Origin: Macrostomum lignano | Taxonomy: Eukaryota | Length of the DNA stretch: 64,000 bases | NCBI GenBank assembly: GCA_002269645.1 | Contig: NIVC01000041.1 | Coordinates: 558,001-622,000, forward strand | Reading direction: 5' to 3' | Shown here: piece by piece, positions 26,444-61,199 of the stretch | Numbering within the stretch: position 1 is the first letter of the stretch | Layout of the letters: every line of letters begins with the position of its first letter | The notes under the pieces: generated by a model | The model's database searches: none | Told to the model about the DNA's origin: nothing | Seen by the model: only the letters and a program-made list of their open reading frames with translations | Translations under genes and position numbers: made by a program

Positions 26444-29400
26444 TCACTTGTTAAGTCTAATAGCAGTGCGGTAAAATTGAGCATCAATCCGCAGCTTCAG
26501 CCATCGCGTACGCCACTGACAAGCCAGATAGCTAACAATAACCAGTAGCGCCAAAACGAAGAGACACAGAGCACCAAGTACAAAGGCAGGAGTATATGGC
26601 CTGTATTTATTAAACCAGCAATCAAACAGGTCTGAGAGAAATTTGTCGATAAACTTATTGCCAGTTGGTATCGGCTCAACCAGTAGCCAGTCGGGCGAAG
26701 ACAGCACTGCGCTAATCCGATCTAGGGAGCCATTATTCGGATTAGCTCGGATGCCCAATAGTCGGCAAGCCAGGGGATAAAGATCCACAGACTCAATCAG
26801 CTGATCAATCTCAACTCCGCCAGACTGAAATGCCGGCCCCCTAGCCAGCCACAGAGGCCACATATCCGTGTCATTGTTAGCGTAGCCGTGCACGCCAAAC
26901 GTAGCAGGATGCTCAGGCGGTATGCCGCCAACAACGATGACGTATGGGGGTCCGCGTACAAATACACTGGCGGTGTCCGCCGCGACCCGTTAAAGTGCAT
27001 CCAATCGGGCAGGTGAGAGGCCAGGTTAGCCCGCAGGTAGGGCAATTTAGCGTCCGAGACGGCTTTGATAATATCTTGAGCTCGGCCTGGTTTCGGCATT
27101 AAGCCCAGGTGTATATTAGCCTTATCGGCTAAGTAATTAACGTACCAATCCGGATTAACTATTTGATCCAAGTCAATTAGATTCGAACTATTGCCCGTCG
27201 TCATGCCGTGATCGGCTGTCAATACGATATTGATTCGATCAGTTAGGCCCAGCTCTTTCAAGCCGGTCATCAATTGGCCAAGCTGTTGGTCCAATTCTAT
27301 TAGCCTGGCGGCAACATCATCGCTCAGGTGGCCAGCCTGGTGGGCAGTGTGATCCGGCTCGTCAAAGTACAACAGGCCCAGATTAATGCCGTACAGCTGC
27401 GGCTGGCCCAGCCAGTGCAGCATGCGACTCACCCGCCGGCTGTACGGATAGCGGACTGAGCTGCCGTTGTTCAGGGTGGCGTACTGGTCCACCTGGGTTG
27501 AGTGGATGGGGTGGGTTGGCTTGCCTAGATATACTAGATTAGCTTGTCTAGATATACTAGATTAGCTTGTCTAGATCTACTAGTTTAGCTTGTCTAGATC
27601 TGCTATACTGGCTTGTCTAGATCTGCTATACTGGCTTGTCTAGATCTGCTAGACTGGCTTGTCTAGATCTGCTAGACTGGCCTGTCTAGATCTGCTAGAC
27701 TGACCTGTCTAGATCTGCTAGACTGACCTGTCTAGATCTACTAGATTGGTATGTCTAGATCTGCTAGACTGACCTGTCTAGATCTACTAGATTGGTATGT
27801 CTAGATTTGCTAGACTGGCTTGTCTAGATCTGCTAGATTGACTTTCCCCAGTGTAATGATTTTTTTGTTGGCCAATAAAGGTTTTAGGTTATCTAATACC
27901 AACTCCTACCTGTACAAAGGGCAAAAAGCCGTTGTAAGGCAGGTCGGAATTCGGGTACAGCACCACGGCGGATCGGCCGCCCTGCCTCTGATTGGTCACC
28001 CACAACGGCTCCGGCCAGCCAGCAGACCAGTCGGGATCATTCAGACTGGACTGGTCAAAGACAGAGAACAATTTGCCTGGCAATTCGGGATCGGCAAACG
28101 TGTTCAAAATGAAACCGTGACTCTCAGAGTAGAGTCCGGTAACCAGGCTCTGATGATTGGGCAGAGTCTCCGTAGGGTACACGTTCTTCACCCGTTTAGC
28201 TCGAACGCCTTGACTAGCGAACGCTTCAAAATTTGGCAGTTGAACGCCTCTAGAGCGGTACAGTTCGAGGTAGTCGTGACGGAATCCATCGAATATGACG
28301 ATTAGTAAGGGCAGTCGGCCGGGTGGTGAACCGGCGGAGTGGTTCGCGCCGCAGGCGATTGACACCTGGGCTAACAGGGCCGCGATGAGCAGAAGGGCGA
28401 CTCTGGCCTGACGGGTGCAGGTTTGGAGTAAAGTTAGAGACGATTTCCAGTGTGGGTGAAGAGGGGATGCTCAGTGTGGGTGGAGGGGATTCTCAGTGTG
28501 GGTGAAGAGGGGATGCTCAGTGTGGGTGAAGAGGGGATTCCCAGTGTGGGTGAAGAGGGGATGCTCAGTGTGGGTGAAGAGGGGACTCAGTGTGGGTGAA
28601 GAGGAGATTCTCAGTGTGGGTGAAGAGGAGATTCTCAGTGTGGGTGAAGAGGAGATTCTCAGTGTGGGTGAAGAGGGGATTCTCAGTGTGGGTGAAGAGG
28701 GGATTCTCAGTGTGGGTGAAGAGGAGATTCTCAGTGTGGGTGAAGAGGAGATTCTCAGTGTGGGTGAAGAGGGGATTCTCAGTGTGGGTGAAGAGGGGAT
28801 TCTCAGTGTGGGTGAAGAGGGGATGCTCAGTGTGGGTGAAGAGGGGATTCTCAGTGTGGGTGAAGAGGAGATTCTCAGTGTGGGTGAAGAGGAGATTCTC
28901 AGTGTGGGTGAAGAGGGGATTCTCAGTGTGGGTGAAGAGGGATTCTCAGTGTGGGTGAAGAGGAGATTCTCAGTGTGGGTGAAGAGGGGATTCTCAGTGT
29001 GGGTGAAGAGGAGATTCTCAGTGTGGGTGAGAGGGGATTCTCAGTGTGGGTGAAGATGGGATTCTCAGTGTGGGTGAAGAGGAGATTCTCAGTGTGGGTG
29101 AAGAGGGGATTCTCAGTGTGGGTGAGAGGGGATTCTCAGTGTGGGTGAAGAGGGGATGCTCAGTGTGGGTGAAGAGGGGATCCTCAGTGTGGGTGAAGAG
29201 GGGATTCTCAGTGTGGGTGAAGAGGGGATTCTCAGTGTGGGTGAAGAGGAGATTCTCAGTGTGGGTGAAGAGGGGATTCTCAGTGTGGGTGAAGAGGGGA
29301 TTCTCAGTGTGGGTGAGAGGAGATTCTCAGTGTGGGTGAAGAGGGGATTCTCAGTGTGGGTGAAGAGGAGATTCTCAGTGTGGGTGAAGAGGAGATTCTC

Positions 29401-30892
29401 AGTGTGGGTGAAGAGGGGATTCTCAGTGTGGGTGAAGAGGAGATTCTCAGTGTGGGTGAAGAGGAGATTCTCAGTGTGGGTGAAGAGGAGATTCTCAGTG
29501 TGGGTGAAGAGGAGATTCTCAGTGTGGGTGAAGAGGGGATTCTCAGTGTGGGTGAAGAGGGACTCAGTGTGGGTGAAGAGGAGATTCTCAGTGTGGGTGA
29601 AGAGGGGATTCTCAGTGTGGGTGAAGAGGAGATTCTCAGTGTGGGTGAAGAGGGGATTCCCAGTGTGGGTGAAGAGGGGATTCTCAGTGTGGGTGAAGAG
29701 GAGATTCTCAGTGTGGGTGAAGAGGAGATTCTCAGTGTGGGTGAAGAGGGGATTCTCAGTGTGGGTGAAGAGGGGATTCTCAGTGTGGGTGAAGAGGGGA
29801 TGCTCAGTGTGGGTGAAGAGGGGATTCTCAGTGTGGGTGAAGAGGAGATTCTCAGTGTGGGTGAAGAGGAGATTCTCAGTGTGGGTGAAGAGGGGATTCT
29901 CAGTGTGGGTGAAGAGGGGATTCTCAGTGTGGGTGAAGAGGAGATTCTCAGTGTGGGTGAAGAGGGGATTCTCAGTGTGGGTGAAGAGGAGATTCTCAGT
30001 GTGGGTGAGAGGGGATTCTCAGTGTGGGTGAAGATGGGATTCTCAGTGTGGGTGAAGAGGAGATTCTCAGTGTGGGTGAAGAGGGGATTCTCAGTGTGGG
30101 TGAGAGGGGATTCTCAGTGTGGGTGAAGAGGGGATGCTCAGTGTGGGTGAAGAGGGGATCCTCAGTGTGGGTGAAGAGGGGATTCTCAGTGTGGGTGAAG
30201 AGGGGATTCTCAGTGTGGGTGAAGAGGAGATTCTCAGTGTGGGTGAAGAGGGGATTCTCAGTGTGGGTGAAGAGGGGATTCTCAGTGTGGGTGAGAGGAG
30301 ATTCTCAGTGTGGGTGAAGAGGGGATTCTCAGTGTGGGTGAAGAGGAGATTCTCAGTGTGGGTGAAGAGGAGATTCTCAGTGTGGGTGAAGAGGGGATTC
30401 TCAGTGTGGGTGAAGAGGAGATTCTCAGTGTGGGTGAAGAGGAGATTCTCAGTGTGGGTGAAGAGGAGATTCTCAGTGTGGGTGAAGAGGAGATTCTCAG
30501 TGTGGGTGAAGAGGGGATTCTCAGTGTGGGTGAAGAGGGGACTCAGTGTGGGTGAAGAGGAGATTCTCAGTGTGGGTGAAGAGGGGATTCTCAGTGTGGG
30601 TGAAGAGGAGATTCTCAGTGTGGGTGAAGAGGGGATTCTCAGTGTGGGTGAAGAGGGGATGCTCAGTGTGGGTGAAGAGGGGATCCTCAGTGTGGGTGAA
30701 GAGGGGATTCTCAGTGTGGGTGAAGAGGGGATTCTCAGTGTGGGTGAAGAGGAGATTCTCAGTGTGGGTGAAGAGGGGACTCAGTGTGGGTGAAGAGGGG
30801 ATTCTCAGTGTGGGTGAAGAGGGGACTCAGTGTGGGTGAAGAGGAGATTCTCAGTGTGGGTGAAGTGCTGATAAGAGAGGGAAATTTACCAT
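26444..30892 (-). CDS. Ectonucleotide pyrophosphatase/phosphodiesterase, type I membrane (ENPP4/5/7-like); complement(join(26444..27492 with a 1-bp frameshift at 26946..26950,27910..28407,30890..30892)), ~516 aa
   Basis: Signal peptide M|ARVALLLIAALLAQVSIA; motifs FDGFR, [36 protein letters not shown] and GVHGY; C-terminal TM AFVLGALCLFVLALLVIVSYL. One extra C restores YADPPYVIVV...GVHGY. Confidence 0.88.
27520..27840. repeat. 23-bp array of hairpin-forming units (CTAGACTGGCTTGTCTAGATCTG) in ENPP intron 2
   Basis: The unit contains the inverted pair CTAGAC...GTCTAG. Confidence 0.9.
28450..30866. repeat. 24-bp array (CAGTGTGGGTGAAGAGGGGATTCT), ~2.4 kb, filling ENPP intron 1
   Basis: Directly visible; gives the SVGEEGIL-type spurious ORFs and contains a 978-bp higher-order duplication. 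Confidence 0.97.
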
Positions 30893-31148: not shown

Positions 31149-32981
31149 TCACATTTTGCAGAAAGTCTGCTGGTAGCCGCAGTCCAGACAAGTGCGGCAG
31201 AACTCGTCCTCGGCGGCCCCGTCAACACCGGCGGAGGCCGCAGGGACCTCGTCGCCGAACCGGTGCTCGTGTCGGTACTGCCGCTTCGGCGCCAGACTGG
31301 ACCGAACGTGCAGCCGCAACTCGCTCATTCGCTTATCGAATTGGCGCTTCTTGGCGCGGTCGCGGGCGCCGGCGCGCTTCTCGTGCTCAGCGTTGAGCGC
31401 CTCCTCGGAGCCCCAGACTTCTAGGGCTCGTTGGGCCACCTGGACAATGATGGGGAATGCAGATGCTGGGTAGAGTATTCTAATGTGCTGGATTATCTCC
31501 ATTTGCAGAAGTACTTGGACGCTTATCTTTGTCCTTTATCTAGAAACAGGATTATCTAGCTACTGGTGGACGTGGATTATCTATTTACTGGTAGATTATC
31601 TATTTACTGGTAGATTATCTAGCTACTGGTGGTTTATCTAGCTACTGATGGATTATCTAGCTACTGATGGATTATCTAGCTACTGATGGATTATCTAGCT
31701 ACTGATGGATTATCTAGCTACTGATGGATTATCTAGCTACTGATGGATTATCTAGCTACTGATGGATTATCTAGCTGCTAGTGGATTATCTAGCTACTGA
31801 TGGATTATCTAGCTGCTAGTGGATTATCTAGCTACTGATGGATTATCTAGCTACTGATGGATTATCTAGCTACTGATGGATTATCTAGCTACTGATGGAT
31901 TATCTAGCTACTGATGGATTATCTAGCTACTGATGGATTATCTAGCTACTAATGGATTATCTAGCTACTGATGGATTATCTAGCTACTGATGGATTATCT
32001 AGCTACTGATGGATTATCTAGCTACTGATGGATTATCTAGCTACTGATGGATTATCTAGCTACTGATGGATTATCTAGCTACTGATGGATTATCTAGCTA
32101 CTGATGGATTATCTAGCTACTGATGGATTATCTAGCTACTGATGGATTATCTAGCTACTGATGGATTATCTAGCTACTGATGGATTATCTAGCTACTGAT
32201 GGATTATCTAGCTACTGATGGATTATCTAGCTACTGATGGATTATCTAGCTACTGATGGATTATCTAGCTACTGATGGATTATCTAGCTACTGATGGATT
32301 ATCTAGCTACTGATGGATTATCTAGCTACTGATGGATTATCTAGAGAGAATTTTACTTATCTAGATTATTTAACTAGCACGACAGGCCACTAACTAACCT
32401 AACCCGGCACCTACCTGAGCCTCCAAATACAGGCGCATATCGCCACCCCTGGGATTGTGCGGGTTCCGCCTGAGCAGGCAGCGCAACGGCGGCTCTCGCC
32501 TGTCCAAATCGCCGTCCTTCAACAGGTAGCGCGACTTGGCGTCGCTGCGAGCCAACAGGCCGTACACATCCTCACGCTGCGTCTCGTAGCAGGCGTCGCA
32601 CACGGCAACGTCAAATCTGTCGTAGAGAAACGACGAATTAAACGGCCTGTCGCAGTCGGCGCACACCAGCTCGTTCGGGTCGATCAGCGGTCCGGGTTCG
32701 ACAACGAGACGACGAGGCTTCTGCTGGTTTCCTCGCTTGCCGCCGCCGCTGCCGTCCTCCTCGTAGATGAAGCCGCCGCAAGAGTCAGTCGCCGCGGCAC
32801 CGACACCGCCGAAACCGACGGCGACGGCTACTGGCGTGGCGTTTGAGGCTGCGCCTGTGGAGGCGGATGGGGCGGCAGCGGATTTGTCCTGCAGGTCGCG
32901 CAGGCGCTGCTTCGACTGGCGCAATAAGAGGGCAGCCTGGCGGTTGCGCTCGCTGCGGGCCAGCTGCTCTTGGGTTAGCGG
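31149..32981 (-). CDS. XPA: XPA/Rad14 DNA damage recognition factor; complement(join(31149..31439,32415..32981)); initiator ATG not found in genomic context
   Basis: N-terminal PLTQEQLARSERNRQAALLLRQ, C4 zinc finger CADC...CDAC, AKSRYLLKDGDLDRREPPLR...RNPHNPRGGDMRLYLEAQ|VAQRALEVWGS and C-terminal HEHRFGDE...CLDCG. Confidence 0.95.
31550..32345. repeat. 19-bp array (GGATTATCTAGCTACTGAT) in the XPA intron
   Basis: Directly visible and highly homogeneous. Confidence 0.97.
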
Positions 32982-33054
32982 CTGCAGTGAAGTGGAGATT
33001 TGCCCATTTTGTATCTACTACTAATAGTAGTTTGTGTATTTCTCTTCTGTATCA

Positions 33055-33300
33055 TCTACTTGCTGGATTATCTACCTTTGTACCATCTACCTGCTGGATT
33101 ATCTACCTTTGTACCATCTACCTGCTGGATTATCTACCTTTGTACCATCTACCTGCTGGATTATCTACCTTTGTACCATCTACCTGCTGGATTATCTATT
33201 AACTGAATTATCTACCCACTGAATTATCTACCCACTGAATTATCTACCCACTGAATTATCTACCTACTGGATGATCTACCTACTGAGATTATCTACCTAT
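33055..33300. repeat. 31-bp then ~18-bp arrays upstream of XPA sharing the GGATTATCTA core
   Basis: GTACCATC at 33080 and 33111. Confidence 0.9.
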
Positions 33301-34015
33301 TGGGTATCACTCAAGTTCTGATAACCAACAGATGCAATGATTATGCAATGGAATAATCGCCTCTCTAAACTGAATACTACAGAGGTATACATAAACCAAT
33401 GAGTTAAACTGAAGCTTAGGTTAGCAAATAGCAAGGTATTGAAGTTGCACTTTAATTAAAGTTAATACACGTGAGTCGAGATAGATGAGTAAACGGAAAA
33501 CGGTCATAGATAACGCGCCCTGTTTACACACTTTACTCGCTCGCTCCCCACTTGAGCAAACACACTGGCTGAGCAAACTTGTGCAGATAAGGCTACAAAA
33601 GCACAACATAGTACACTAGTACAGTGTCTATTGACAAGGCTAAGGATTCTATAGCTAGTTTAATAAACCCCACAATCCAGATTATATCTATGAAAGTCTC
33701 TGGTCTTTGGCAGGGTCAAATTTGGTTAAGAACAGGCACACAAGTGCTACAAGTGTACACGCTGGTATCAAGAGAAATTCTACCGCTGTCAACCACCCCA
33801 CACACGAATGAGGATGTTAGACAATAAATTTAATTAAGTATCTAAAAGTGGTAGCCAGTTCTAACTTGTACTGTCTAACTATACTTGCCTTTAACTTATT
33901 AATTTTATAAGAAGCACAATAATAATAAGCCAATTCCAACAACTATGGTGACTACCACAAGGTAACTACATAGAAAGTCTAAAATGTTCCAAAACAGTCT
34001 CAAATGTGCCTAGCC

Positions 34016-34566: not shown

Positions 34567-37500
34567 TCAAGGCGTCTCAAACATGTTTAAAGTGTCTACA
34601 CAGGGCCAGAGCAGCGTCTGACTCTTGCACCCGGGTCCCTGGTTCGATTCCTTGCACAAAAATGCATTCAAGGCTTGTACACCCTGTGTGAGCGTGTGCA
34701 TGAGTGCCTGCCTGTGTACAGTATTGGCGCGCTTGCATGTGCTCAGGAGTCCCGTCAATACTGCCGCTGAATCAGCCAAGGGCTCACTATGCAGCTAATG
34801 ACTATGCTGCCTAAAAGTACAAATAAACAAAACGATCCAAAAGCAAGAATGCCAAACTTCAGTCAGATCAGAATAAACAAATGGATATTCGAGCAATTTA
34901 TACTTAAAAATAAAACAAACCGGGTCGATTAGGTAATTCGAAGCATTAAAGAAAAAGCCAACAAAAATATTGCCAGAAAAGATAAGCCAAATTTGTGTAC
35001 AAAAATACAGTAACAGACAAGTGAGTGAAATGGACGAATAAAATAATTATTGATATAACAGTGCATAAAATCATATTAGCATATAATGACTGACAGTAAA
35101 ACACTATGGCAATAATCAATGTTTTTAAAATATTTGTTATAATGATTAACTCGAATAATAATATATAAAAACTACACCATACTGACAATCAATAAAAATC
35201 ATTATTTAGGTACGTACACACTAAGTGACAAAAATTGTACCTATTGCATTCATCATTTCTGGGATAAAATGTCTCAACTACATACTCATACTATTGCTTG
35301 TAAATATACTGAAAATAATATGCAGTCACCAATTATCTAGCTAGCTAACTAATTAGCTATCCAGGTAACTAATTAGCTATCCAGGTAACTAATCAGCTAT
35401 CCAGGTAACTAATCAGCTATCCAGGTAACTAATCAGATATCCAGGTAACTAATCAGCTATCCAGGTAACTAATCAGCTACCCAGGTAACTAATCAGATAT
35501 CCAGGTAACTAATCAGCTATCCAGGTAACTAATCAGCTATCCAGGTAACTAATCAGATATCCAGGTAACTAATCAGCTATCCAGGTAACTAGTCAGCTAC
35601 CCAGGTAACTAATCAGCTACCCAGGTAACTAATGAGCCCTCCAGATAACTAATTAGACATCTAGGTAACTAATCAGCAATGTCACTACAATCAAACTTAC
35701 TCCAATCCATGTCAGTATCCCTAAGCCCCAACTGAGCGATCAAAGTGTCGCAAATAGCGCAGCAAATTCTGCATAGTAACAAAGTCGGCCTTACCAAAGC
35801 TGAAGCCGAACCTAAACAGGTTGTCAAGCAAGCCGCGTCTGCCGGGAAAGCGGAACGAGTCGATGTCGGGCCGCTGGAACAGGCCCGGCTGAAGGCTGTT
35901 TCCGAGCTCCAGCAGCCCGTCAAAGATGAGGTCGCAGTCGCGGTACACGAAGAACAGCGGCCTGCGGGTGTCCAAGCAGCGCTGCAGCAGGGACCTGGCG
36001 TGGCTGCCTTCACGGCGCAGCTCCTCGAACAGCGGCTCGTCCAGCACAAATAGGAAAATGGTTTGTCCAAGCTGCTGCGGGCCGATATTTACTGGCTTCA
36101 AATCCAAGTGCCTTAACCTTACTGGGATTTTATCCCTATCCGTATTCCCAATACACTTTCCATTATCCACATTCTCAGAATCACCTGTCATCATCAGTAT
36201 TCCGATGAAAATTCCCAATACTGACTCCCAGCATCCCCAATCCCAATTTCCAGCATCCCCGATCTCGACTCCCAGCATCCCCAATCCCGATTCCCAGCAT
36301 CCCCAATCCCGATTCCCAGCATCCCCAATCCCGATTCCCAGCATCCCCAATCCGGATTCCCAGCATCTGCAATCCCGATTTCCATCATCACTAATGGCGA
36401 TTCCCAGCAGCATATTTCTTTAAAGGAATAAGTATAAGCTGCAGACAAAGCCGGAACCTGTTTAATGCCAATAGCAGCATCGCAAAGCCCTCACCTGCGT
36501 AACACCGTCAGCGTAAGCAGTTGGCCCAGGCGAACATTTCCAGTCAGTCTCAAAGCAGACATCGTAGGGAATGAGCTCCACGCTGGCGGGCTCCGCACAG
36601 GCAATGAATTTGCCCAACTGCAGGTCCAAGTCCGCCAAACTGACGGCTCCGTTAGCGCAGATGCGCACAGCGGCGCGGCGAAGCGTCAGGCCAGCCGGCT
36701 GCGCTGCGCTGCCCCGGCCTGCCAGCCGGCCTGCCAAGCTGTGCAGCAGCTGGCGTAGCGGACTCAGCGGCGACCTGCGATTTGGGGGCTCTTCTTCGAG
36801 CAGCTCGAACAGAATGACAGCCGCCAGTTCCAGACGATTTCTGTCGATCAATCCGACAAGAAAGCCGCGAACTTGGTTGCCAGCCTGCCTGCTGATGTGC
36901 TGCACCAGCTGGTCCTGACATGTGACATGGTTATTACAAGTTATTAGCAGGGGAGCGGTGAACTTGTAAGAGGCTTGAACGCAGTGCCGCACTCTCTCAC
37001 AGCAGTGCAGCACTATATCACAACAGCAGTGCAGCACTCTCACACAGCAGCAGTGCAGCACTCTCACACAGCAGCAGTGCAGCACTCTCTCACAGCAGCA
37101 GTGCAGCACTCTCTCACAGCAGCAGTGCAGCACTTTATCACAGCAGCAGTGCAGCACTCTCACAGCAGCAGTGCAGCACTCTCTCACACAGCAGCAGTGC
37201 AGCACTCTCACAGCAACAAGACAGCACTCTCTCACACAGCAGCAGTACAGCACTCTCTCACAGCAGCAGTGCAGCACTCGCACACAGCAGCAGTGCAGCA
37301 CTCCCTCACAGCAGCAGTGCAGCACTCTCTCACAGCAGCAGTGCAGCACTCTCTCACAGCAGCAGTGCAGCACTCTCTCACAGCAGCAGTGCAGCACTCT
37401 CTCACAGCAGCAGTGCAGCACTCTCTCACAGCAGCAGTGCAGCACTCTCTCACAGCAGCAGTGCAGCACTCTCTCTCACAGCAGCAGTGCAGCACTCTCA

Positions 37501-38565
37501 CAGCAGCAGTGCAGCACTCTCACAGCAGCAGTGCAGCACTCTCACACAGCAGTGCAGCACTCCCTCACAGCAGCAGTGCAGCACTCTCTCACAGCAGCAG
37601 TGCAGCACTCTCTCACAGCAGTGCAGCACTCTCACAGCAGCAGTGCAGCACTCTCACAGCAGCAGTGCAGCACTCTCTCACACAGCAGCAGTGCAGCACT
37701 CTCTCACACAGCAGCAGTGCAGCACTCTCTCACACACAGCAGCAGTGCAGCACTCTCTCACACAGCAGCAGTGCAGCACTCTCACACAGCAGCAGTGCAG
37801 CACTCTCTCACAGCAGTGCAGCACTCTCTCACACAGCAGCAGTGCAGCACTCGCACACAGCAGCATATCACACATGACACCATAGCACATCATAGCACTC
37901 ACCACGCTCATGCCCATTATGGTCTGAAAGTCCAGGTTCTGAACCAAGCCAATGTTGACTACAAAATCGTGACCCAACACCGGGTTCTGAAGCCGAGCCA
38001 GGTACAACTTGAATAGAGATTCTCCTCTGCTACTGATGTCGCCCAGAGGAGACTGCAGTCGCCGTGCCAGCTGCACAGACTTGGCCTCTGCCAGGTGTAC
38101 AAGACCGGCAAGGGACCCAGACCCGAAGCTGCGCAGGTGGTCGCAGCGCCGCAGGAAGTCAGCAAACCGAATCAGCTTGCTTGAACGATCTGCAAGATTC
38201 TCCTCCCACAGGTGCAGCAGTTTCAGCAGGCAGCACCGCAGCTCTGCAAAGTCCTCTGACTGCAGCTGGTACAGCTGCTGAACTGTCACCAGCTGGTCCA
38301 TCAGTTTAACTAACAGCACTTCTCCTCTAAGGCTCATCGCTTCATTGGATGTCAGGTTAACAAGACGGAGTATGTCTCCAGTGGATTCACTGTGGACAAT
38401 GCTGTGCAGCGCACTCAGTAGGTCAGTCAGAATCAGCTTTGATGCTTCGGGTAAATAGCCAAATAAGGCGAGTGGCAGTGAGCCATGCCTGTCTAAGACC
38501 TCATCATCTCTATTGTTGTTGAGTGGCTGCTCCATGTCTGACATTGCAGCAATGTAGAATGCCAT
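34567..38565 (-). CDS. Unknown protein, paralog 1: helical N-terminus plus a TIR-like alpha/beta region; complement(join(34567..34766,35795..36074,36495..36914,37903..38565)), ~520 aa
   Basis: Donors GTG|GTGAGT, CAG|GTGAGG and G|GTAAGG; phases 0,0,1 give an open frame. The acceptor at 36075 and the last exon are less sure. If the last donor is unused, the ORF stops at 35721. Confidence 0.65.
34603..34651 (+). other. Degenerate tRNA-Lys(CTT)-like sequence, probably a tRNA-derived SINE head
   Basis: GGCCAGAGC...GACTCTT...GGGTCCCTGGTTCGATTCC with a B-box; no intact acceptor stem, so not called as a tRNA. Confidence 0.45.
35340..35675. repeat. 20-bp array (CCAGGTAACTAATCAGCTAT) in putative intron 3 of paralog 1
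   Basis: Directly visible. Confidence 0.95.
36225..36410. repeat. 22-bp array (CCCAGCATCCCCAATCCCGATT) in intron 2 of paralog 1
   Basis: About 8 copies; only degenerate seed copies in the equivalent intron of paralog 2. Confidence 0.88.
36985..37865. repeat. ~24-bp array (CAGCAGCAGTGCAGCACTCTCTCA) in intron 1 of paralog 1
   Basis: Directly visible; same family as 42225..43272. Confidence 0.95.
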
Positions 38566-41162: not shown

Positions 41163-43973
41163 TTATTCCATCGCAGCGTCTAAACAACTTAAACAGCTTA
41201 TCAGATTCTGCATGGTAACAATTTCGGCTCTCCGACGCATCGCCGATTCGTTGCGACGGCCAGCTGGCCAGCCGATGCGGAGCGGGCAAAACCGGGAACA
41301 TCCAACTGTTGACGTGGTTTCAGACAGGCAAACCGTCTGTCCAGGAAAGCGGAACGAGTCGATGTCGGGCCGCTTGAACAGGCCCGACTGAAGGCCGTTC
41401 CCGAGTTCCAGCAGCCCGTCAAAGATGAGGTCGCAGTCGCGGTACACGAAGAACAGCGGCCTGCGGGTGCCCAAGCAGTGCTGCAGCAGGGACCTGGCGT
41501 GGCTGCCTTCACGGCGCAGCTCCTCGAACAGCGGCTCGTCCAGCACAAATAGGAAAATGGTTTGATGAAGCTGCTGCTCCAGTAGCTGCTGCGGGCCGAT
41601 ATTTACTGGCTTCGAATCCAAGTGGCTTAACCTTACTGGAACTTGATCCCTAGCCGTACTCTTACAATATCCATTCCATAATTTACATTCCCAGAATCAA
41701 TCCCCAATCTCGATTCCAAAATCATTAATCCAGACTTCTTCAGCAATCCCTGTTTAAAGAATCCCCATTTCCAATTCCAAGCATCCCCAATCCAAATGTC
41801 CAGCAGGTCTCACCGACATCACCCAATCAGAGTAGCAAAATCCATCATCTGCAGCGAAGGTCCAGTCAGTCTCAAAGCAGACATCGTAGGGAATGAGCTC
41901 CACGCTGGCGGGCTCCGCACAGGCAATGCATTTGCCCAACTGCGGGTCCAAGTCCGCCAAACTGACGGCTCCGCTAGCGCAGATGCGCACAGCGGCGCGG
42001 CGAAGCATTGGGCCAGCCGGCTGCGCTGGCGGCGGCGCACAGTTCGACGGATTTGCATCTTCGAGCAGCTCGAACAGAATGACGGCCGCCAGTTCCAGAC
42101 GATTTCTGTCGATCGATCCGACGAGAAAGCCGCGAACTTGGTTGACAGCCTGCCTGCTGATGTGCTGCACCAGCTGGTCCTGACATGTGACATGGAAGTT
42201 GTATAAAACGTAATGTAATAGCTTAGCAGCACTCTCACACAGCAGCAGTGCAGCACTCTCTCACACAGCAGCAGTGCAGCACTTTATCACAGCAGCAGTG
42301 CAGCACTCTCTCACAGCAGCAGTGCAGCACTCTCTCACACAGCAGCAGTGCAGCACTTTATCACAGCAGCAGTGCAGCAATCTCTCACAGCAGCAGTGCA
42401 GCACTCTCTCACAGCAGCAGTGCAGCACTTTATCACAGCAGCAGTGCAGCACTCTCTCACAGCAGCAGTGCAGCACTCTCTCACAGCAGCAGTGCAGCAC
42501 TCTCTCTCAGCAGCAGTGCAGCACTCTCTCTCACAGCAGCAGTGCAGCACTCTCTCACAGCAGCAGTGCAGCACTCTCTCACAGCAGCAGTGCAGCACTC
42601 TCTCACAGCAGCAGTGCAGCACTCTCGCTCAGCAGCAGTGCAGCACTCTCTCTCACAGCAGCAGTGCAGCACTCTCTCACAGCAGCAGTGCAGCACTCTC
42701 TCACAGCAGCAGTGCAGCACTCTCTCACAGCAGCAGTGCAGCACTCTCTCACAGCAGCAGTGCAGCACTCTCTCACAGCAGCAGTGCAGCACTCTCTCAC
42801 AGCAGCAGTGCAGCACTCTCTCACAGCAGCAGTGCAGCACTCTCTCTCACAGCAGCAGTGCAGCACTCTCTCACAGCAGCAGTGCAGCACTCTCTCACAG
42901 CAGCAGTGCAGCACTCTCTCTCACAGCAGCAGTGCAGCACTCTCTCACAGCAGCAGTGCAGCACTCTCTCACAGCAGCAGTGCAGCACTCTCTCACAGCA
43001 GCAGTGCAGCACTCTCTCACAGCAGCAGTGCAGCACTCTCTCACAGCAGCAGTGCAGCACTCTCTCTCACAGCAGCAGTGCAGCACTCTCTCACAGAAGC
43101 AGTGCAGCACTCTCTCTCACAGCAGCAGTGCAGTACTCTCTCACAGCAGCAGTGCAGCACTCTCACACAGCAGCAGTGCAGCACTCTCACACAGCAGCAG
43201 TGCAGCACTCTCTCATACAGCAGCAGTGCAGCACTCACACACAGCAGCAGTGCAGCACTCGCACACAGCAGCATATCACACATGACACCATAGCACATCA
43301 TAGCACTCACCACGCTCATGCCCATTATGGTCTGAAAGTCCAGGTTCTGAACCAAGCCAATGTTGACTACAAAATCGTGACCCAACACCGGGTTCTGAAG
43401 CCGAGCCAGGTACAACTTGAATAGAGATTCTCCTCTGCTACTGCTGTCGCCCAGAGGAGACTGCAGTCGCTGTGCCAGCTGCACAGACTTGGCCTCTGCC
43501 AGGTGTACAAGACCGGCAAGAGACCCAGACCCGAAGCTGCGCAGGTGGTCGCAGCGCCGCAGGAAGTCAGCAAACCGAATCAGCTTGCTTGAACGATCTG
43601 CAAGATTCTCCTCCCACAGGTGCAGCAGTTTCACCAGGCAGCACCGCAGCTCTGCAAAGTCCTCTGGCTGCAGCTGGTACAGCTGCTGAACTGTCACCAG
43701 CTGGTCCATCAGTTTAACTAACAGCACTTCGCCTCTAAGGCTCATCGCTTCATTGGATGTCAGGTTAACAAGACGGAGTATGTCTCCAGTGGATTCACTG
43801 TGGACAATGCTGTGCAGCGCACTCAGTAGGTCAGTCAGAATCAGCTTTGATGCTTCGGGTAAATAGCCAAATAAGGCGAGTGGCAGTGAGCCATGCCTGT
43901 CTAAGACCTCATCATCTCTATTGTTGTTGGGTGGCTGCTCCATGTCTGACATTGCTGCAATGTAGAATGCCAT
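41163..43973 (-). CDS. Unknown protein, paralog 2; complement(join(41163..41588,41814..42179,43311..43973))
   Basis: Exon 1 is the same length as in paralog 1 (663 nt) and nearly identical; exon 2 lacks the SPLSPLRQLLHSLAGRLAGRG segment; the C-terminus diverges after FRFPG. Confidence 0.65.
42225..43272. repeat. ~24-bp CAGCAGCAGTGCAGCACTCTCTCA array in intron 1 of paralog 2
   Basis: Directly visible; longer than its counterpart in paralog 1. Confidence 0.95.
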
Positions 43974-48800: not shown

Positions 48801-51800
48801 TGACCATTGCAAAATGGCTACTTGGAAATTATTGCATGATTGTAGTGTGTATTTTCCAAAACTGCGCAATAACTACAATAAAATGCCTGAACTTGCAAGC
48901 TGTGAACAAAAAGATCGAGAAAAATAGCTGGGTCACAATCACATACACGCACACACACACCAAGTACTAATTAACTGTGTACAGTAGCTATTGCTGTTAT
49001 TACAACATAGAAAGTGAATTGTTACTTGAAAGGCTTGTGATCACAAAACGCTTTGTCTAGCGCAGTCAAAATGATGCCACAACTGGCACGAGTCACAAAG
49101 GATAGAACGGCCACTTGATAGCTCTTTACGACAGCTTCCACAAAAGTGCTGGGGCGCACGCAGGGATTTCGTTATCATTTGCAGCAGTCGAGTTGTATCG
49201 ACGTAATTGACCAGAAGTGCGACAGAACTACTGACATCTTCTTCGATGAACTGAGACGGAAGGTTATGAACCTCGACAGGCGCAACAGGCTCGCCTCCCT
49301 TCATAAGAGCATCAGCGCGCCGAGAGTCAAAAAGCCAGGTTAACATGGCTACAAAGTTACAAATCATATAGCTCGTAGTCATTTAAAGGAATGCAGCAAC
49401 CAAAAAGCAGAGCATATAAAAACCGATTTATACTTACTTTTGACTTTATTTTTGTTGTCCAGTTCGGAGAACGCACGAGGTCCGCGAAGGCGTCTTCTCT
49501 TGATTCCAGTTACAGTCGTATCAGAACCTCTCGGTCGACCTCGTCGCTTACAGGCAGCTGGAAGTGACAAGCCTGCCAATCGCTCAGCCTCAGCACGACG
49601 CTCAGCTTCGGCGAGTCGCTCAGCTTCGGTGAGTCGCTCAGCTTCGGCGAGTCGCTCAGCTTCGGCGAGTCGCTCAGCTTCGGCGAGTCGCTCAGCCTCC
49701 AGACGCTTAGCTTCGGCGAGTCGCTCAGCTTCGGCGAGTCGCTCAGCCTCCAGACGCTTAGCTTCGGCGAGTCGCTCAGCTTCGGCGAGTCGCTCAGCTT
49801 CGGCGAGTCGCTCAGCTTCGGCGAGTCGCTCAGCCTCAGCACGACGCTTAGCTTCGGAGAGTCGCTCAGCTTCGGCGAGTCGCTCAGCCTCCAGACGCTC
49901 AGCTTCGGCGAGTCGCTCAGCTTCGGCGAGTCGCTCAGCTTCGGCGAGTCGCTCAGCCTCAGCACGACGCTTAGCTTCTGCGAGTCGCTGAGCCTCAGCA
50001 CGACGCTTAGCTTCGGCGAGTCGCTCAGCTTCGGCGAGTCGCTCAGCTTCGGCGAGTCGCTCAGCTTCGGCGAGTCGCTCAGCTTCGGCGAGTCGCTCAG
50101 CCTCAGCACGACGCTTAGCTTCTGCGAGTCGCTGAGCCTCAGCACGACGCTTAGCTTCGGCGAGTCGCTCAGCTTCGGCGAGTCGCTCAGCTTCGGCGAG
50201 TCGCTCAGCTTCGACGAGTCGCTCAGCTTCAGCGAGTCGCTCAGCCTTATCACGACGCTCAGCTTCGGCGAGTCGTTCAGCTTCGGCGAGTCGCTCAGCT
50301 TTGGCGAGTTGCGCTGCTTCCTGTTGTTTGGTCCTGGCCTGTTGTTCTGAATCGACCAGTCGCTCGGTGTTCTCTGTTCTCTTAAATGAAAGCCGAACAG
50401 CAACTAAAAAATACTTTGCAAGCTTTGCAACTTTTAACCCAATAACATATATGGCCGCAATACTTACCCCCAGGAGCGCATCAATGTCGAATGTGTCAAA
50501 AACATTGTCGTCAGATGTGCTTGTCCGGTCTCCTTGAGGCAGGTGTTGGAGTGGTTCGCGTCGGAGTGGCTCACTCTGAATTTCGATACCGAGAGCCGTA
50601 CCTTCCTTCCAGGCTTGCAGCACGTACTCCAAGAGCGATATTCGCCTGTTAAATTCAGTCATCCCTACGGATGACGCGACCTGTGCCAGTTCGATGCAAA
50701 CTGAGTGAGCCTTGCGAAATTTCTGCGTCTCCGTCAAAACCCGCTTCTCCTTTTTCTCAGTCGTATGGACAGTAACGGAGCTGTCGGTTGATGGCATTTC
50801 TGTCACGGAAAGCCAGTAACGTTGCAGCCACCTCTGTGGAACTAAGTTCTCATGAAACAATGGAAGGAGCTCCTGCTCCCTGAGTCGCAGAATATGCCTG
50901 CATGGCAGCAGAAAAGCATTAAAAGCGGCGCACTGGCACGACTGCCTGGTAACTGAAAGAATGCCTTCCCGGTTTTTTGACAGTCCATCATTGACAGTAG
51001 TTGATGAAATGTGCCCAGCTTCCTTCTGAACATGTGCAAAGGCATACGGTGTGAGTACTCGGTAGTATGAGTACAGAAAACTTGTGCGCGGCGGCGGTGG
51101 CATTGGTCTGTTCAGTGCATCAAATGATTGATGATTCAGCTCCTCGTCGGTTGCTCGAAGCACGAGGAGAAGGTCGCCAACGAAGGACGTCATCTCTGCA
51201 TTGCGCCCAGTGACACCTTTCACCCGTCGATGGAAGCTTTCTAGTCGCTGAGTACCGGTCAAGCCAATGTTCATGCTGAGCTTTGTGTAGCACCACGCCC
51301 ACTGTTGCCTGCAGCCATACCAGTTTTTGTCGAAATACTCCATAAATCTCGGCGATCCCAAATGCTGCAGTTCGCTGTAAAGGCTTTCAAACTTCGCTTG
51401 CGTTGCTGAGTGGACCATTTTTTGGAGATTCTCAATGATTGCATTTTTCTGAGATGCCGTGATGCCCATTTGGCTTTCCGTCACCTGGCGCCTGAAGGTG
51501 CGTAAAACGTGAAATTGACATAAATTTGCCTCGGCATTCGAGAAACACTGAGTCAGTATTTTCAGCGCTGTCAAATCTTTATCAACTAACAGGGATCGGA
51601 CCTTGTCACATGATTTAAAAGTACGTTGAAAAAAATTTATAGCAGTAGTCACAGTATCTGCTTCTTCATTTGCCGTTAGGATGACTGCCACTACTCGACT
51701 ATTGCCATTACCATCAACAACCATCGGCAAGAACAGTGGCATATTACGGTTGTTGACCTTATAGGTAGCGTCAAAAATCAGAACTTCTGGATATGCTTCG

Positions 51801-60052: not shown

Positions 60053-61199
60053 TATAAATAACTTTATCAAATTGGATATTGAGTTTTGTTATAATGTCAA
60101 ATAATTGCCACATCACAGCTTCCTATTTTTTAAATTTGCCATATCTACAATGTGCTGACAAACATCTAATACATTCTGATTTGTTGCTATCTTTGACATT
60201 GTGGTAAACATTAATCTCTTGCCAAATGAATTAATGATATAAATAATTAATCATATTATAAATGTCTGTAATATTCAAGTTTGCATTGATTAAATCAACT
60301 TCCATGAAGAATCCCCTACCCAAAAACCCCTTATCCCATTCTATGCCCAGATATTTGATCACATACATGCGCAACTGCTGGCCAATCTGGCCACTGTAAA
60401 TTGTGGTGGACCAGGGGTAAGTTGCAAAAATGCCCAGCCTAAAGAATATGGATGTAGTACTAATCAGATGACAAGGCATTTAGCTCTTATAATGCAGTCA
60501 AAGTTACTCCTGCCATTTAACCAAAATTGCATTAAGGTTTCTTTCACAGGTAAGTCGCATTTTTGGTCAAAAAGTAAGTCGCATGGCCAGTGTAAATCAG
60601 CGGGGTTGTGCGTGTATGGTTGATCATTGACCTTTTTCTTCCTTCTATTTTGGAGAAAGATTGATCTTTCTTCTATTGAGTCTAGAATTTATCAACACCT
60701 TGAATGGGTCTGACTCTAGGCCTCTATTCAAGTTTTTGTTGATAAAAGTAACCCCCATCAAGGATCCCCTACCCATAAACCCCCTATTTCCCATGCCCTA
60801 GTATTTGGTCATTGACCTTTTGGTAGGCCCTAGGGTTTACATTCCCTAGTTTATATTATTGAATTGAATATTTGAGAAAGAGCAAATACACATTTATATG
60901 TCACACTTTATGTGAAAAAAATTTTTATTGCATGAGACTGCACCCTAAGTGCCACGCATTATGTGCCGTGTGCACCAAAAAATTCCTTTGTGTGCACCAC
61001 AATTTTTCATGACATATATCACTTTCCTGACTGTGATAATTCCCTTTATTATAGACCAAGTCAGGGTGATTTTATATATGCTAGAAGTTACCCAAAAATC
61101 TTACTGCATATTGAAAAGCTTTAAAGCAGCAATCAGCATAATTGAGAACCTTTTTTTGCAAGAACAAAACCTGCTACATACTTTAGAGGCTTGTCTAGT

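What the first reader, a model, noticed from the sequence alone, without database searches (positions are those of the whole stretch)
32940..33300. XPA lacks a genomic initiator ATG: candidate for a spliced-leader-supplied AUG
The XPA frame begins right after an acceptor (TTCACTGCAG|CCG CTA ACC) in phase 0. The unspliced upstream frame hits TAG with no ATG, the nearby ATG at ~33007 is out of frame, and I found no convincing phase-0 ATG exon upstream. M+PLTQEQLARSERNRQAAL aligns with the extreme N-terminus of yeast Rad14 (MTPEQKAKLEANRKLA), so only the Met seems to be missing. Flatworm spliced leaders are known to end in AUG, which can act as the start codon. An alternative is that the 31-bp repeat supplies ATG|GTACAA on the minus strand as a Met-only exon.
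Basis: partly seen in the sequence, partly recalled or inferred. Interest (0 to 1): 0.7.

Follow-up and report, generated by a model that had tools for sequence, protein, structure and literature searches.

The report
XPA start codon supplied by trans-splicing
This flatworm (Macrostomum lignano) DNA-repair gene XPA has no start codon of its own in the genome and almost certainly gets its AUG from the spliced-leader RNA joined to its first exon, a mechanism already known in flatworms, so the finding is correct but ordinary.

Summary
The window is Macrostomum lignano (Mlig_3_7, contig NIVC01000041.1). XPA lies on the minus strand in two exons (32981..32415 and 31439..31149). Its frame opens after three TAG codons and holds no ATG before the acceptor ctgCAG|CCG at 32981. 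The first in-frame Met is residue 182, after the zinc finger.

The published single SL of this species ends in ...TTGCATG, and the acceptor fits the published trans-splice motif [T/C]TNCAG. GenBank's model of a paralogous copy is a "partial" CDS that starts exactly at CCG.

In the two paralogous loci, the only clustered differences in the 120 nt upstream turn the bases next to the junction into the last 4 or 6 SL bases (CATG, TGCATG). That assembly was polished with RNA-seq, and the older ML2 assembly reads CTG CAG there. I read these bases as footprints of SL-bearing XPA mRNA.

The rival 400-aa GenBank model for this locus borrows an out-of-frame ATG from an upstream same-strand gene. The next gene downstream (ENPP-like) shows the same anatomy: a signal peptide that lacks only its Met.

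The mechanism has been known since Cheng et al. 2006. No SL-joined reads could be inspected here.

The parts
32982..32998 (-). Pyrimidine-rich tract plus the 3' splice acceptor (atctccacttcactgCAG). This is the proposed SL trans-splice site. The SL would be joined to base 32981.
   Evidence: Sequence. CTGCAG fits the published M. lignano trans-splice acceptor motif [T/C]TNCAG (PMC8629364). GenBank model PAA92718.1 uses the same acceptor. The equivalent base is the CDS 5' end of paralogue PAA60043.1.
32415..32981 (-). XPA exon 1: 567 nt, 189 codons, phase 0, starting with CCG (Pro) and containing no initiator ATG. It holds the zinc finger (C107-C131 of the 285-aa product). It ends at the donor CAG|GTAGGT.
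   Evidence: Pfam XPA_N and XPA_C. The first in-frame Met is residue 182.
31440..32414 (-). Intron 1 of XPA (GTAGGT...CAG). Most of it is a 19-bp minisatellite (31573..32344, 40.6 copies).
31149..31439 (-). XPA exon 2 (VAQRALEVWGSEE...TFCKM) including the TGA stop at 31151..31149.
   Evidence: The spliced product is 100% identical to A0A1I8G7R7 and PAA92718.1.
33015..33023 (-). Three consecutive in-frame TAG stops that close the XPA frame 11 codons upstream of the acceptor.
33005..33007 (-). The nearest upstream ATG. It is out of frame (MGKSPLHCSR*) and lies in the outron, which trans-splicing would remove.
33048..33298 (-). 31-bp minisatellite in the outron.
   Evidence: TRF. ATGs listed. Copy number differs between the three loci.
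35795..36071 (-). A coding exon of the upstream same-strand gene g1. The real frame reads LGQTIFLFVLDEPLFEEL.... Its donor, GTAAGG at 35794, is joined to the XPA acceptor in GenBank model PAA92718.1, which reads this exon in the wrong frame.
   Evidence: Frame corroborated by the ML2-derived protein P0027.
36495..36872 (-). g1 exon 2 (VRGFLVG...ADGVTQ, 126 codons). The ATG at 36562 used by the 400-aa XPA model lies inside it, in another frame.
37975..38565 (-). g1 exon 1 (MAFYIAAMSDMEQPLNNNRDDEVL...), which carries g1's own genomic ATG.
35721..35723 (-). TAG stop of g1 when the donor at 35794 is not used (...GFSFGKADFVTMQNLLRYLRHFDRSVGA*). It lies 2739 bp upstream of the XPA acceptor.
27913..28410 (-). 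Acceptor cccgtCAG (28410..28408) plus the first exon of the downstream ENPP-like phosphodiesterase gene. The exon starts at 28407 with GCC AGA GTC = ARVALLLIAALLAQVSIACG. This is a second ORF that lacks only its Met.
   Evidence: Pfam Phosphodiest from residue 34.

Best explanation
XPA is the second of three same-strand genes (g1, XPA, ENPP-like) that are probably transcribed together. Its mature mRNA is made by spliced-leader trans-splicing. The 35-nt SL exon (...AATTTATTGCATG) is joined to the acceptor ctgCAG| at base 32981, which discards the outron together with its TAG stops, its out-of-frame ATG and its 31-bp minisatellite. The last three SL bases then sit directly in front of CCG CTA ACC and act as the initiator codon of a 286-aa XPA (MPLTQEQLARSERNRQ...).

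Shown here: the gene structure, the absence of any usable genomic ATG, the species and its SL sequence, the fit to the acceptor motif, and the SL-like bases at the junction in the paralogous loci.

Inferred: that this particular copy is trans-spliced at 32981, and that ribosomes start at the SL AUG.
For: 1. Anatomy. The exon starts in phase 0 right after a CAG that follows a pyrimidine-rich tract. Three TAGs lie upstream and there is no in-frame ATG. The first in-frame Met is residue 182 of 285, after the zinc finger.

2. Species and SL. The protein is 100% identical to M. lignano proteins, and the locus is GCA_002269645.1 NIVC01000041.1. The SL is CGGTCTCTTACTGCGAAGACTCAATTTATTGCATG (PMC8629364; PMC5173321). 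[quoted passage not shown]

3. Acceptor. CTGCAG fits the trans-splice motif [T/C]TNCAG.

4. Annotation. Gene 5' ends in this annotation were set from SL-read peaks by the TBONE pipeline (PMC5730564). Paralogue PAA60043.1 is a 5'-partial CDS that begins exactly at CCG.

5. Footprints. From -120 to -1 the three copies are identical apart from one substitution at -94 and a block next to the junction. That block reads CTGCAG in the window, CATG (last 4 SL bases) in L002 and TGCATG (last 6 SL bases) in L003. Fisher tests for the clustering give p = 1.4e-5 and 1.9e-7. Mlig_3_7 was Pilon-polished with STAR-mapped RNA-seq. The ML2-derived proteins of the window-type and L003-type alleles both read T-S-L-Q (ACT TCA CTG CAG) before PLTQ. 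So mRNA of the form ...TGCATG|CCGCTAACC exists.

6. Neighbours. The same acceptor is used in the locus's own GenBank model. The downstream ENPP-like gene has the same no-ATG anatomy. The three-gene order is conserved in all three loci.

7. Precedent. [quoted passage not shown] 2006, as summarised in PMC9851317).
Against: No SL-containing read or cDNA joined at 32981 could be inspected. The junction was not found in the one collection that could be scanned. The footprints are in the paralogous loci, not in this copy. The GenBank model for this copy (PAA92718.1) is a cis-spliced read-through rather than a transcript cut at the SL site. The genome may hold more than three copies, so matching the ML2 proteins to L003 is not certain. 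N-terminal extensions of XPA vary in length between species, so protein homology alone cannot exclude a short upstream coding exon. Translation from the SL AUG is inferred, not shown.
Confidence: 0.85

Rival explanations
1. A cis-spliced upstream exon supplies the ATG, as in GenBank PAA92718.1 (400 aa). In that model the ATG at 36562 leads through exon 36562..36495 and exon 36071..35795 into the acceptor at 32981.
For: The model exists in GenBank for exactly this locus. It has canonical splice sites (GTGAGG, CAG, GTAAGG) and is in frame with XPA.
Against: Its 115 extra residues (rich in C, S, T and A, with no Pfam hit) are read from the coding exons of the upstream gene g1 in the wrong frame. 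The g1 frame is open across all three exons and is the one used by the ML2-derived protein P0027. A transcript that includes g1's own AUG would be read in the g1 frame, which enters XPA exon 1 shifted by one base and stops after about 66 junk codons. The paralogue models lack the extension. The substitution test between frames was inconclusive. This junction is better read as a by-product of co-transcription.
Confidence: 0.04
2. A first exon ending in ...ATG inside the 31-bp minisatellite (ATG|GTACAA, for example at 33086 or 33179) is cis-spliced to 32981.
For: Two repeat copies place the ATG in phase 0 relative to the acceptor, at -105 and -198.
Against: The donor GTACA does not fit the species consensus GT[G/A]AG. 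No gene model uses it. The array differs in copy number and composition between the three loci. It does not explain the SL-derived bases at the junction.
Confidence: 0.02
3. The ATGs in front of CCG in L002 and L003 are real genomic bases. Those copies then make XPA from their own start codon, and the window copy is a start-less, possibly non-functional, duplicate.
For: The deposited assembly reads cATG|CCG in L002 and tgcATG|CCG in L003. The window copy's own model is not cut at an SL site.
Against: The changed bases equal the SL's terminal bases beyond the ATG itself, and they form the only cluster of change in 120 nt. The assembly was polished with RNA-seq. The ML2 proteins read CTG CAG for the L003-type allele. 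Even in L002 the transcript-based CDS starts at CCG and is flagged partial, which is not expected if an ATG were transcribed just upstream. The window ORF is intact and identical to a UniProt entry.
Confidence: 0.06
4. Translation starts at a non-AUG codon (for example the CTG just upstream of CAG) on an unspliced or differently processed transcript.
For: A CTG lies in frame at -6.
Against: That codon lies in the outron. The outron also contains an out-of-frame ATG uORF. Nothing here calls for this when an AUG-terminated SL and a matching acceptor are present.
Confidence: 0.02

Closest known systems
Schistosoma mansoni mRNAs that use the SL 3'-terminal AUG as initiator (Cheng, Cohen, Ndegwa & Davis 2006, J Biol Chem 281:733; cited through PMC9851317 and PMC12582326)
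   Same: A flatworm SL ending in AUG is joined in frame to an ORF that has no genomic start codon. The SL supplies both the cap and the initiator Met.
   Different: The species is different (a free-living macrostomorph) and so is the gene (XPA). Use of the SL AUG is inferred here from genome anatomy, annotation boundaries and assembly footprints, not shown by cDNA or translation assays.
slORFs (ORFs created by SL addition; slORFfinder, PMC9851317)
   Same: The ORF is complete only after the SL is added.
   Different: slORFs were defined from SL-containing reads together with ribosome footprints. Neither data type was available here.
M. lignano operons / transcriptional units resolved by SL trans-splicing (Wudarski 2017, PMC5730564; Ustyantsev & Berezikov 2021, PMC8629364)
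   Same: Same-strand neighbours, downstream genes that begin at trans-splice acceptors, and intergenic spacers inflated by minisatellites. The gene name Mlig004330.g2 marks it as the second gene of a transcriptional unit.
   Different: XPA to ENPP-like meets the repeat-adjusted criterion of under 1 kb (about 323 bp). g1 to XPA is about 2.1 kb after subtracting tandem repeats only, so operon membership of that pair is not established.
XPA / Rad14 of other eukaryotes
   Same: XPA_N zinc finger and XPA_C domain. The conserved N-terminal ERNRQ motif starts at residue 3-4.
   Different: The orthologues retrieved all start with Met in their deposited sequences, and most have 8-28 extra N-terminal residues.

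Membership tests
Flatworm ORFs initiated by the spliced-leader AUG | The organism's SL exon ends in AUG. | tested here: met
   The organism was identified as M. lignano. The published SL is ...TTATTGCATG (PMC8629364; PMC5173321).
Flatworm ORFs initiated by the spliced-leader AUG | A 3' splice acceptor lies directly in front of the first sense codon, so that SL-AUG is in phase 0 with the ORF. | tested here: met
   ctgCAG|CCG CTA ACC. Exon 1 is 567 nt and in phase 0. It fits the motif [T/C]TNCAG.
Flatworm ORFs initiated by the spliced-leader AUG | No usable genomic AUG exists, either upstream in frame or early within the ORF. | tested here: met
   Three TAGs lie 11 codons upstream with no ATG between them and the acceptor. 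The first internal Met is residue 182.
Flatworm ORFs initiated by the spliced-leader AUG | SL-bearing transcripts are joined at that acceptor. | tested here: inconclusive
   The evidence is indirect only. The paralogue's CDS 5' end is at CCG in an annotation cut at SL-read peaks. SL-derived CATG/TGCATG bases sit at the junction in L002 and L003 of an RNA-seq-polished assembly. No reads could be examined, and the junction string is absent from metagenome contigs.
Flatworm ORFs initiated by the spliced-leader AUG | Translation starts at the SL AUG (protein N-terminus or ribosome footprints). | not testable with these tools
   This needs ribosome profiling or N-terminal proteomics.
XPA/Rad14 DNA-repair protein | XPA_N zinc finger and XPA_C domain. 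| tested here: met
   PF01286 at 32.7 bits (cut-off 27.1) and PF05181 at 63.1 bits (cut-off 25). 39-43% identity to metazoan XPAs over 98-100% of the length.
M. lignano SL-resolved operon (criterion of PMC8629364) | Adjacent same-strand genes, with the downstream one trans-spliced and a repeat-adjusted intergenic distance under 1 kb. | tested here: inconclusive
   XPA stop to ENPP-like acceptor is 2741 bp, of which 2418 bp is one 24-bp minisatellite, leaving about 323 bp: met. g1 stop to XPA acceptor is 2739 bp with only 588 bp of tandem repeat: not met unless the rest is transposon sequence, which was not masked here. Co-transcription is suggested by the exon-B-to-XPA junction in PAA92718.1.

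The most novel reading that the evidence does not exclude
The SL-identical bases in front of CCG in the two paralogous loci (CATG, TGCATG) might be real genomic sequence rather than polishing artefacts. That would mean short RNA-templated conversion from SL-trans-spliced XPA mRNA has hard-wired the leader's AUG into the genome and destroyed the acceptor. The three copies would then capture the evolutionary step from an SL-supplied start codon to a genomic one.
Probability: 0.05. Interest if true: 0.8.

Novelty: new member of a known kind. Interest (0 to 1): 0.3.

Why it matters
For XPA itself, the correct protein is 286 aa (MPLTQEQ...). The three public models are each wrong at the N-terminus: the 285-aa "partial" one, the 289-aa TSLQ... 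one and the 400-aa one. This is a concrete example of how gene finders that require an ATG, or longest-ORF callers, mis-annotate SL-AUG genes in flatworms.

For users of the Mlig_3_7 assembly, the junction bases in the paralogous loci suggest that RNA-seq polishing overwrote some trans-splice acceptors with SL bases. That creates false genomic ATGs and erases AG acceptors, which matters for promoter and 5'-end design of transgenes and for acceptor-motif statistics.

Biologically this is another instance of a mechanism described in 2006, so it does not open a new question.

Tried and rejected
1. Synonymous versus non-synonymous changes between the three loci and the tandem copy, to decide which frame of g1 exon 2 and exon B is coding. 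There were too few substitutions (5-14 per comparison) and no frame stood out. The frame argument therefore rests on ORF continuity, the ML2 model P0027 and amino-acid composition.

2. Direct search for the chimeric SL-XPA junction (29-mer) in metagenome contigs: no match.

3. Looking for a protein starting MPLTQEQ in the 5.8-billion-protein collection.

4. An exact 11-nt SL suffix (TTTATTGCATG) at 60924..60934 (+) was considered as another footprint. It was rejected because it lies in AT-rich sequence with no ORF behind it, and such matches occur at chance level.

5. A window-wide scan for other long ORFs that start at in-phase acceptors. The first script had a coordinate bug and is disregarded. 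The corrected scan added nothing beyond XPA and the ENPP-like gene.

6. Gene ids Mlig026438, Mlig004330 and Mlig015453 were searched in papers and in the supplements of PMC8629364: nothing is held.

7. The UniProt label 'MMS19' for the upstream gene has no Pfam family and no PDB relative at E < 1, so it is not relied on.

8. The bacterial promoter/terminator scan of the outron is at shuffle level and is irrelevant for a eukaryote.
Full report
**What is there**

The feature is on the minus strand. Read that way, the sequence is ...TAG TAG TAG ATA CAA AAT GGG CAA ATC TCC ACT TCA CTG CAG|CCG CTA ACC CAA GAG CAG CTG..., with the bar between 32982 and 32981.

From 32981 the frame stays open for 189 codons to a donor CAG|GTAGGT at 32415/32414. 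A 975-bp intron follows, mostly a 19-bp minisatellite. The frame resumes after ...tccag| at 31439 and ends at the TGA at 31151..31149.

The 285-aa product has the Pfam XPA_N zinc finger and the XPA_C domain, both above cut-off. It is 39-43% identical to metazoan XPAs over its full length.

The frame contains no ATG between the three TAGs (33023..33015) and the acceptor. The ATG at 33007 is in another frame and gives MGKSPLHCSR*. The other five ATGs within 400 nt upstream are the repeated ATG GTA CAA AGG TAG of the 31-bp minisatellite or are out of frame. The first Met inside the ORF is residue 182, after the four zinc-finger cysteines at 107-131.

**Whose genome it is**

The product is 100% identical to UniProt A0A1I8G7R7 of Macrostomum lignano. 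The window matches GenBank assembly GCA_002269645.1 (Mlig_3_7), contig NIVC01000041.1 (locus L001). This matters because M. lignano has a single, well-documented spliced leader, CGGTCTCTTACTGCGAAGACTCAATTTATTGCATG, which ends in ATG (PMC8629364; the same 3' end is given in PMC5173321). About 30% of its genes are trans-spliced and about 15% lie in operons. Joining that leader to 32981 gives ...TTGC ATG CCG CTA ACC = M-P-L-T-Q-E-Q in frame. The acceptor CTGCAG fits the motif most enriched at M. lignano trans-splice sites, [T/C]TNCAG.

**What the public gene models say**

The 90%-identity cluster holds five models.

- Two UniProt entries derived from the older ML2 assembly start TSLQPLTQ..., with no Met. 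The four extra codons are the last 12 nt of the outron, ACT TCA CTG CAG.
- GenBank PAA60043.1 (a paralogous locus, L002) is flagged "partial" and starts exactly at PLTQ.
- PAA60049.1 (a third locus, L003) is partial and starts 15 nt further in, at QLARS.
- PAA92718.1, the model for this very locus (Mlig004330.g2), is 400 aa and starts with Met.

In the Mlig_3_7 annotation, gene 5' ends were set by cutting transcriptional units at peaks of SL-containing reads after trimming the SL (TBONE pipeline, PMC5730564). ORFs were then called on the trimmed transcripts. A 5'-partial CDS that starts at the first base after an acceptor is what that procedure yields for a gene whose AUG was trimmed away with the leader.

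I rebuilt it. Exon 36562..36495 (donor GTGAGG), exon 36071..35795 (acceptor CAG, donor GTAAGG) and the XPA acceptor at 32981 reproduce its sequence exactly. So 32981 is also used as a cis acceptor in at least one assembled transcript, which independently validates the splice site.

Both upstream exons, however, are coding exons of another gene on the same strand, which I call g1. It has its own ATG at 38565, and its frame is open through 38565..37975, 36872..36495 and 36071..35795. It ends at a TAG at 35723..35721 if the last donor is not used. The ML2-derived protein P0027, which corresponds to a tandem copy of g1 at 41-44 kb in this window, uses that frame (...QTIFLFVLDEPLFEELRREGSHARSLLQRCL...).

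The 400-aa model reads those exons in a different frame, starting from an internal ATG. That gives 115 residues rich in Cys, Ser, Thr and Ala with no family match. In the g1 frame, the exon-B-to-XPA junction enters XPA shifted by one base and stops after about 66 codons. The extension is therefore a longest-ORF artefact on a read-through transcript. An attempt to confirm the frame from substitution patterns between copies failed for lack of differences. What the junction does suggest is that transcription runs from g1 into XPA.

**Footprints of the leader in the paralogous loci**

I aligned the three loci around the junction. From -120 to -1 they are identical except for one base at -94 in L003 and a block that touches the junction.

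| Locus | Sequence at the junction |
|---|---|
| Window | CACTTCACTGCAG\|CCG |
| L002 | CACTTCACTCATG\|CCG |
| L003 | CACTTCATGCATG\|CCG |

The changed bases turn the outron end into exactly the last 4 nt (L002) or last 6 nt (L003) of the SL. The clustering is far from chance (Fisher p = 1.4e-5 and 1.9e-7), and every changed base equals the SL base.

Taken at face value these are genomic ATGs. I think they are not real, for four reasons.

- Mlig_3_7 was polished with Pilon using Illumina DNA reads and also RNA-seq mapped by STAR. The same paper ran STAR end-to-end for transcript assembly. In that mode, reads starting a few bases inside the SL align across the junction with terminal mismatches. 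It is my inference that this mode, or an equivalent, was also used for the polishing step.
- The match extends beyond ATG into the preceding SL bases.
- The ML2-derived proteins of both the window-type and the L003-type alleles read T-S-L-Q before PLTQ, which corresponds to CTG CAG.
- In L002 the transcript-based CDS still starts at CCG and is marked partial. That would not happen if an ATG were transcribed immediately upstream.

PMC8629364 also reports that a sequence earlier taken for the SL RNA gene maps to the 5' end of a trans-spliced protein-coding gene. This shows that SL sequence can turn up at such sites in these assemblies.

Whether the blocks are artefact or real, they have to come from mRNA in which ...TGCATG is joined to CCGCTAACC. 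This is the closest thing to transcript evidence available here. It comes from the paralogues, which share bases -93 to +53 with the window copy.

**A second case next door**

The next gene downstream on the same strand is an ENPP-like phosphodiesterase (Pfam Phosphodiest from residue 34). Its annotated CDS begins directly after cccgtCAG| at 28407 with ARVALLLIAALLAQVSIACG, a signal peptide that lacks only its Met. There is a stop in frame upstream, no ATG in any frame within 200 nt, and no Met in the 165 codons of the exon.

The 2741 bp between the XPA stop and this acceptor include a 2418-bp minisatellite with a 24-bp unit. The repeat-adjusted spacer is therefore about 323 bp, inside the 1-kb operon criterion of PMC8629364. 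The order g1, XPA, ENPP-like is conserved in all three loci. The g1-to-XPA spacer is 2739 bp with only 588 bp of tandem repeat, so operon status for that pair is not established by that criterion.

**Comparison with what is known**

All flatworm SLs described end in AUG (PMC12582326). Cheng et al. 2006 showed in Schistosoma mansoni that this AUG is in frame in 28% of trans-spliced mRNAs and is required by more than 40 cDNAs (as summarised in PMC9851317). For Macrostomum, Wiberg et al. 2023 state that the SL likely contains the start codon. XPA of M. lignano meets the sequence-level criteria for this class. The transcript-level criterion is met only indirectly, and the translation-level criterion could not be tested. 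It is a new example of a known mechanism, not a new mechanism.

**Alternatives**

Its donor GTACA does not fit the species consensus GT[G/A]AG, no model uses it, and it does not explain the SL bases at the junction. Non-AUG initiation in the outron is unnecessary and would compete with an out-of-frame uORF. Real genomic ATGs in the paralogues are discussed above. I give that about 5%, and it is the only reading that would make the locus remarkable.

**Limits**

No reads, cDNAs or peptides were examined. The window copy itself shows no footprint, and its own GenBank model is a read-through. The number of XPA copies in this partly duplicated genome is not known. XPA N-termini vary in length between species, so homology alone cannot prove that only the Met is missing. 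One orthologue, however, starts MPKLTDAQRAKIERNRQ, just one residue longer than MPLTQEQLARSERNRQ.

**Verdict**

Novelty is low. The practical value lies in correcting three discordant public protein models and in flagging probable RNA-seq-polishing footprints at trans-splice sites of the reference assembly.

Noticed in passing
window 27913-28410 (minus strand): The ENPP-like phosphodiesterase gene downstream of XPA also has no genomic ATG. Its first exon starts right after cccgtCAG| with ARVALLLIAALLAQVSIACG, a signal peptide that lacks only the Met. There is no ATG within 200 nt upstream and no Met in the 165-codon exon. It is probably a second ORF that depends on the SL AUG, in the same transcription unit.
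   Followed up: partly
L002 9997-10000 and L003 9980-9985 (paralogous XPA loci on NIVC01002200.1): The bases just upstream of the XPA exon read CATG and TGCATG, the last 4 and 6 nt of the SL, where the window and the ML2-derived proteins have CTGCAG. These are probably SL bases written into Mlig_3_7 by Pilon polishing with RNA-seq. They create false genomic ATGs and erase the AG acceptor.
   Followed up: partly
L003 10001 (equivalent to window 32966): GenBank's partial CDS for the third copy starts 15 nt further in, at CAG CTG GCC (QLARS), after ...CCCAAGAG|. An SL joined there would also be in frame (MQLARSERN...). This may be an alternative in-frame trans-splice acceptor or a boundary-calling offset. 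Unexplained.
   Followed up: no
window 35721-38565 and 41166-43973 (minus strand): There are two tandem copies of the upstream gene g1 (about 438 aa; MAFYIAAMSDMEQP(L/P)NNNRDDEVL...). Each has a 24-bp minisatellite in its first intron (36981-37865 and about 42.2-43.3 kb). UniProt names the ML2 version 'MMS19 nucleotide excision repair protein', but no Pfam family or PDB relative supports that name. If the name were right, two excision-repair genes would be co-transcribed.
   Followed up: partly
window 31573-32344, 33048-33303, 35346-35677, 28448-30865: Minisatellites fill the XPA intron (19-bp unit), the outron (31- and 16-bp units), the g1-XPA spacer (20-bp unit) and the XPA-ENPP spacer (24-bp unit, 101 copies). 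The intron and outron units share the core TAGATAATCCA. Copy numbers differ between the three paralogous loci.
   Followed up: no
L002 and L003: NIVC01002200.1 55307-77883 (forward) and 116707-138163 (reversed): Two g1-XPA-ENPP copies lie on the same 194-kb contig in opposite orientation, about 40-60 kb apart. This is either a real inverted segmental duplication or an assembly join between haplotypes or homeologues.
   Followed up: no
window 58905-59975 (+) and 49382-52285 (-): There are two transposase-like ORFs. One is mariner/Mos1-type (HTH_48 plus DDE_3, 357 aa). The other is a 968-aa MULE/ZSWIM1-3-type ORF whose C-terminal third is a low-complexity repeat.
   Followed up: partly
window 60924-60934 (+): An exact 11-nt match to the SL 3' end (TTTATTGCATG) lies in AT-rich sequence with no ORF behind it. 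It is judged to be chance: 11 of 100 shuffles give as many one-mismatch hits.
   Followed up: yes
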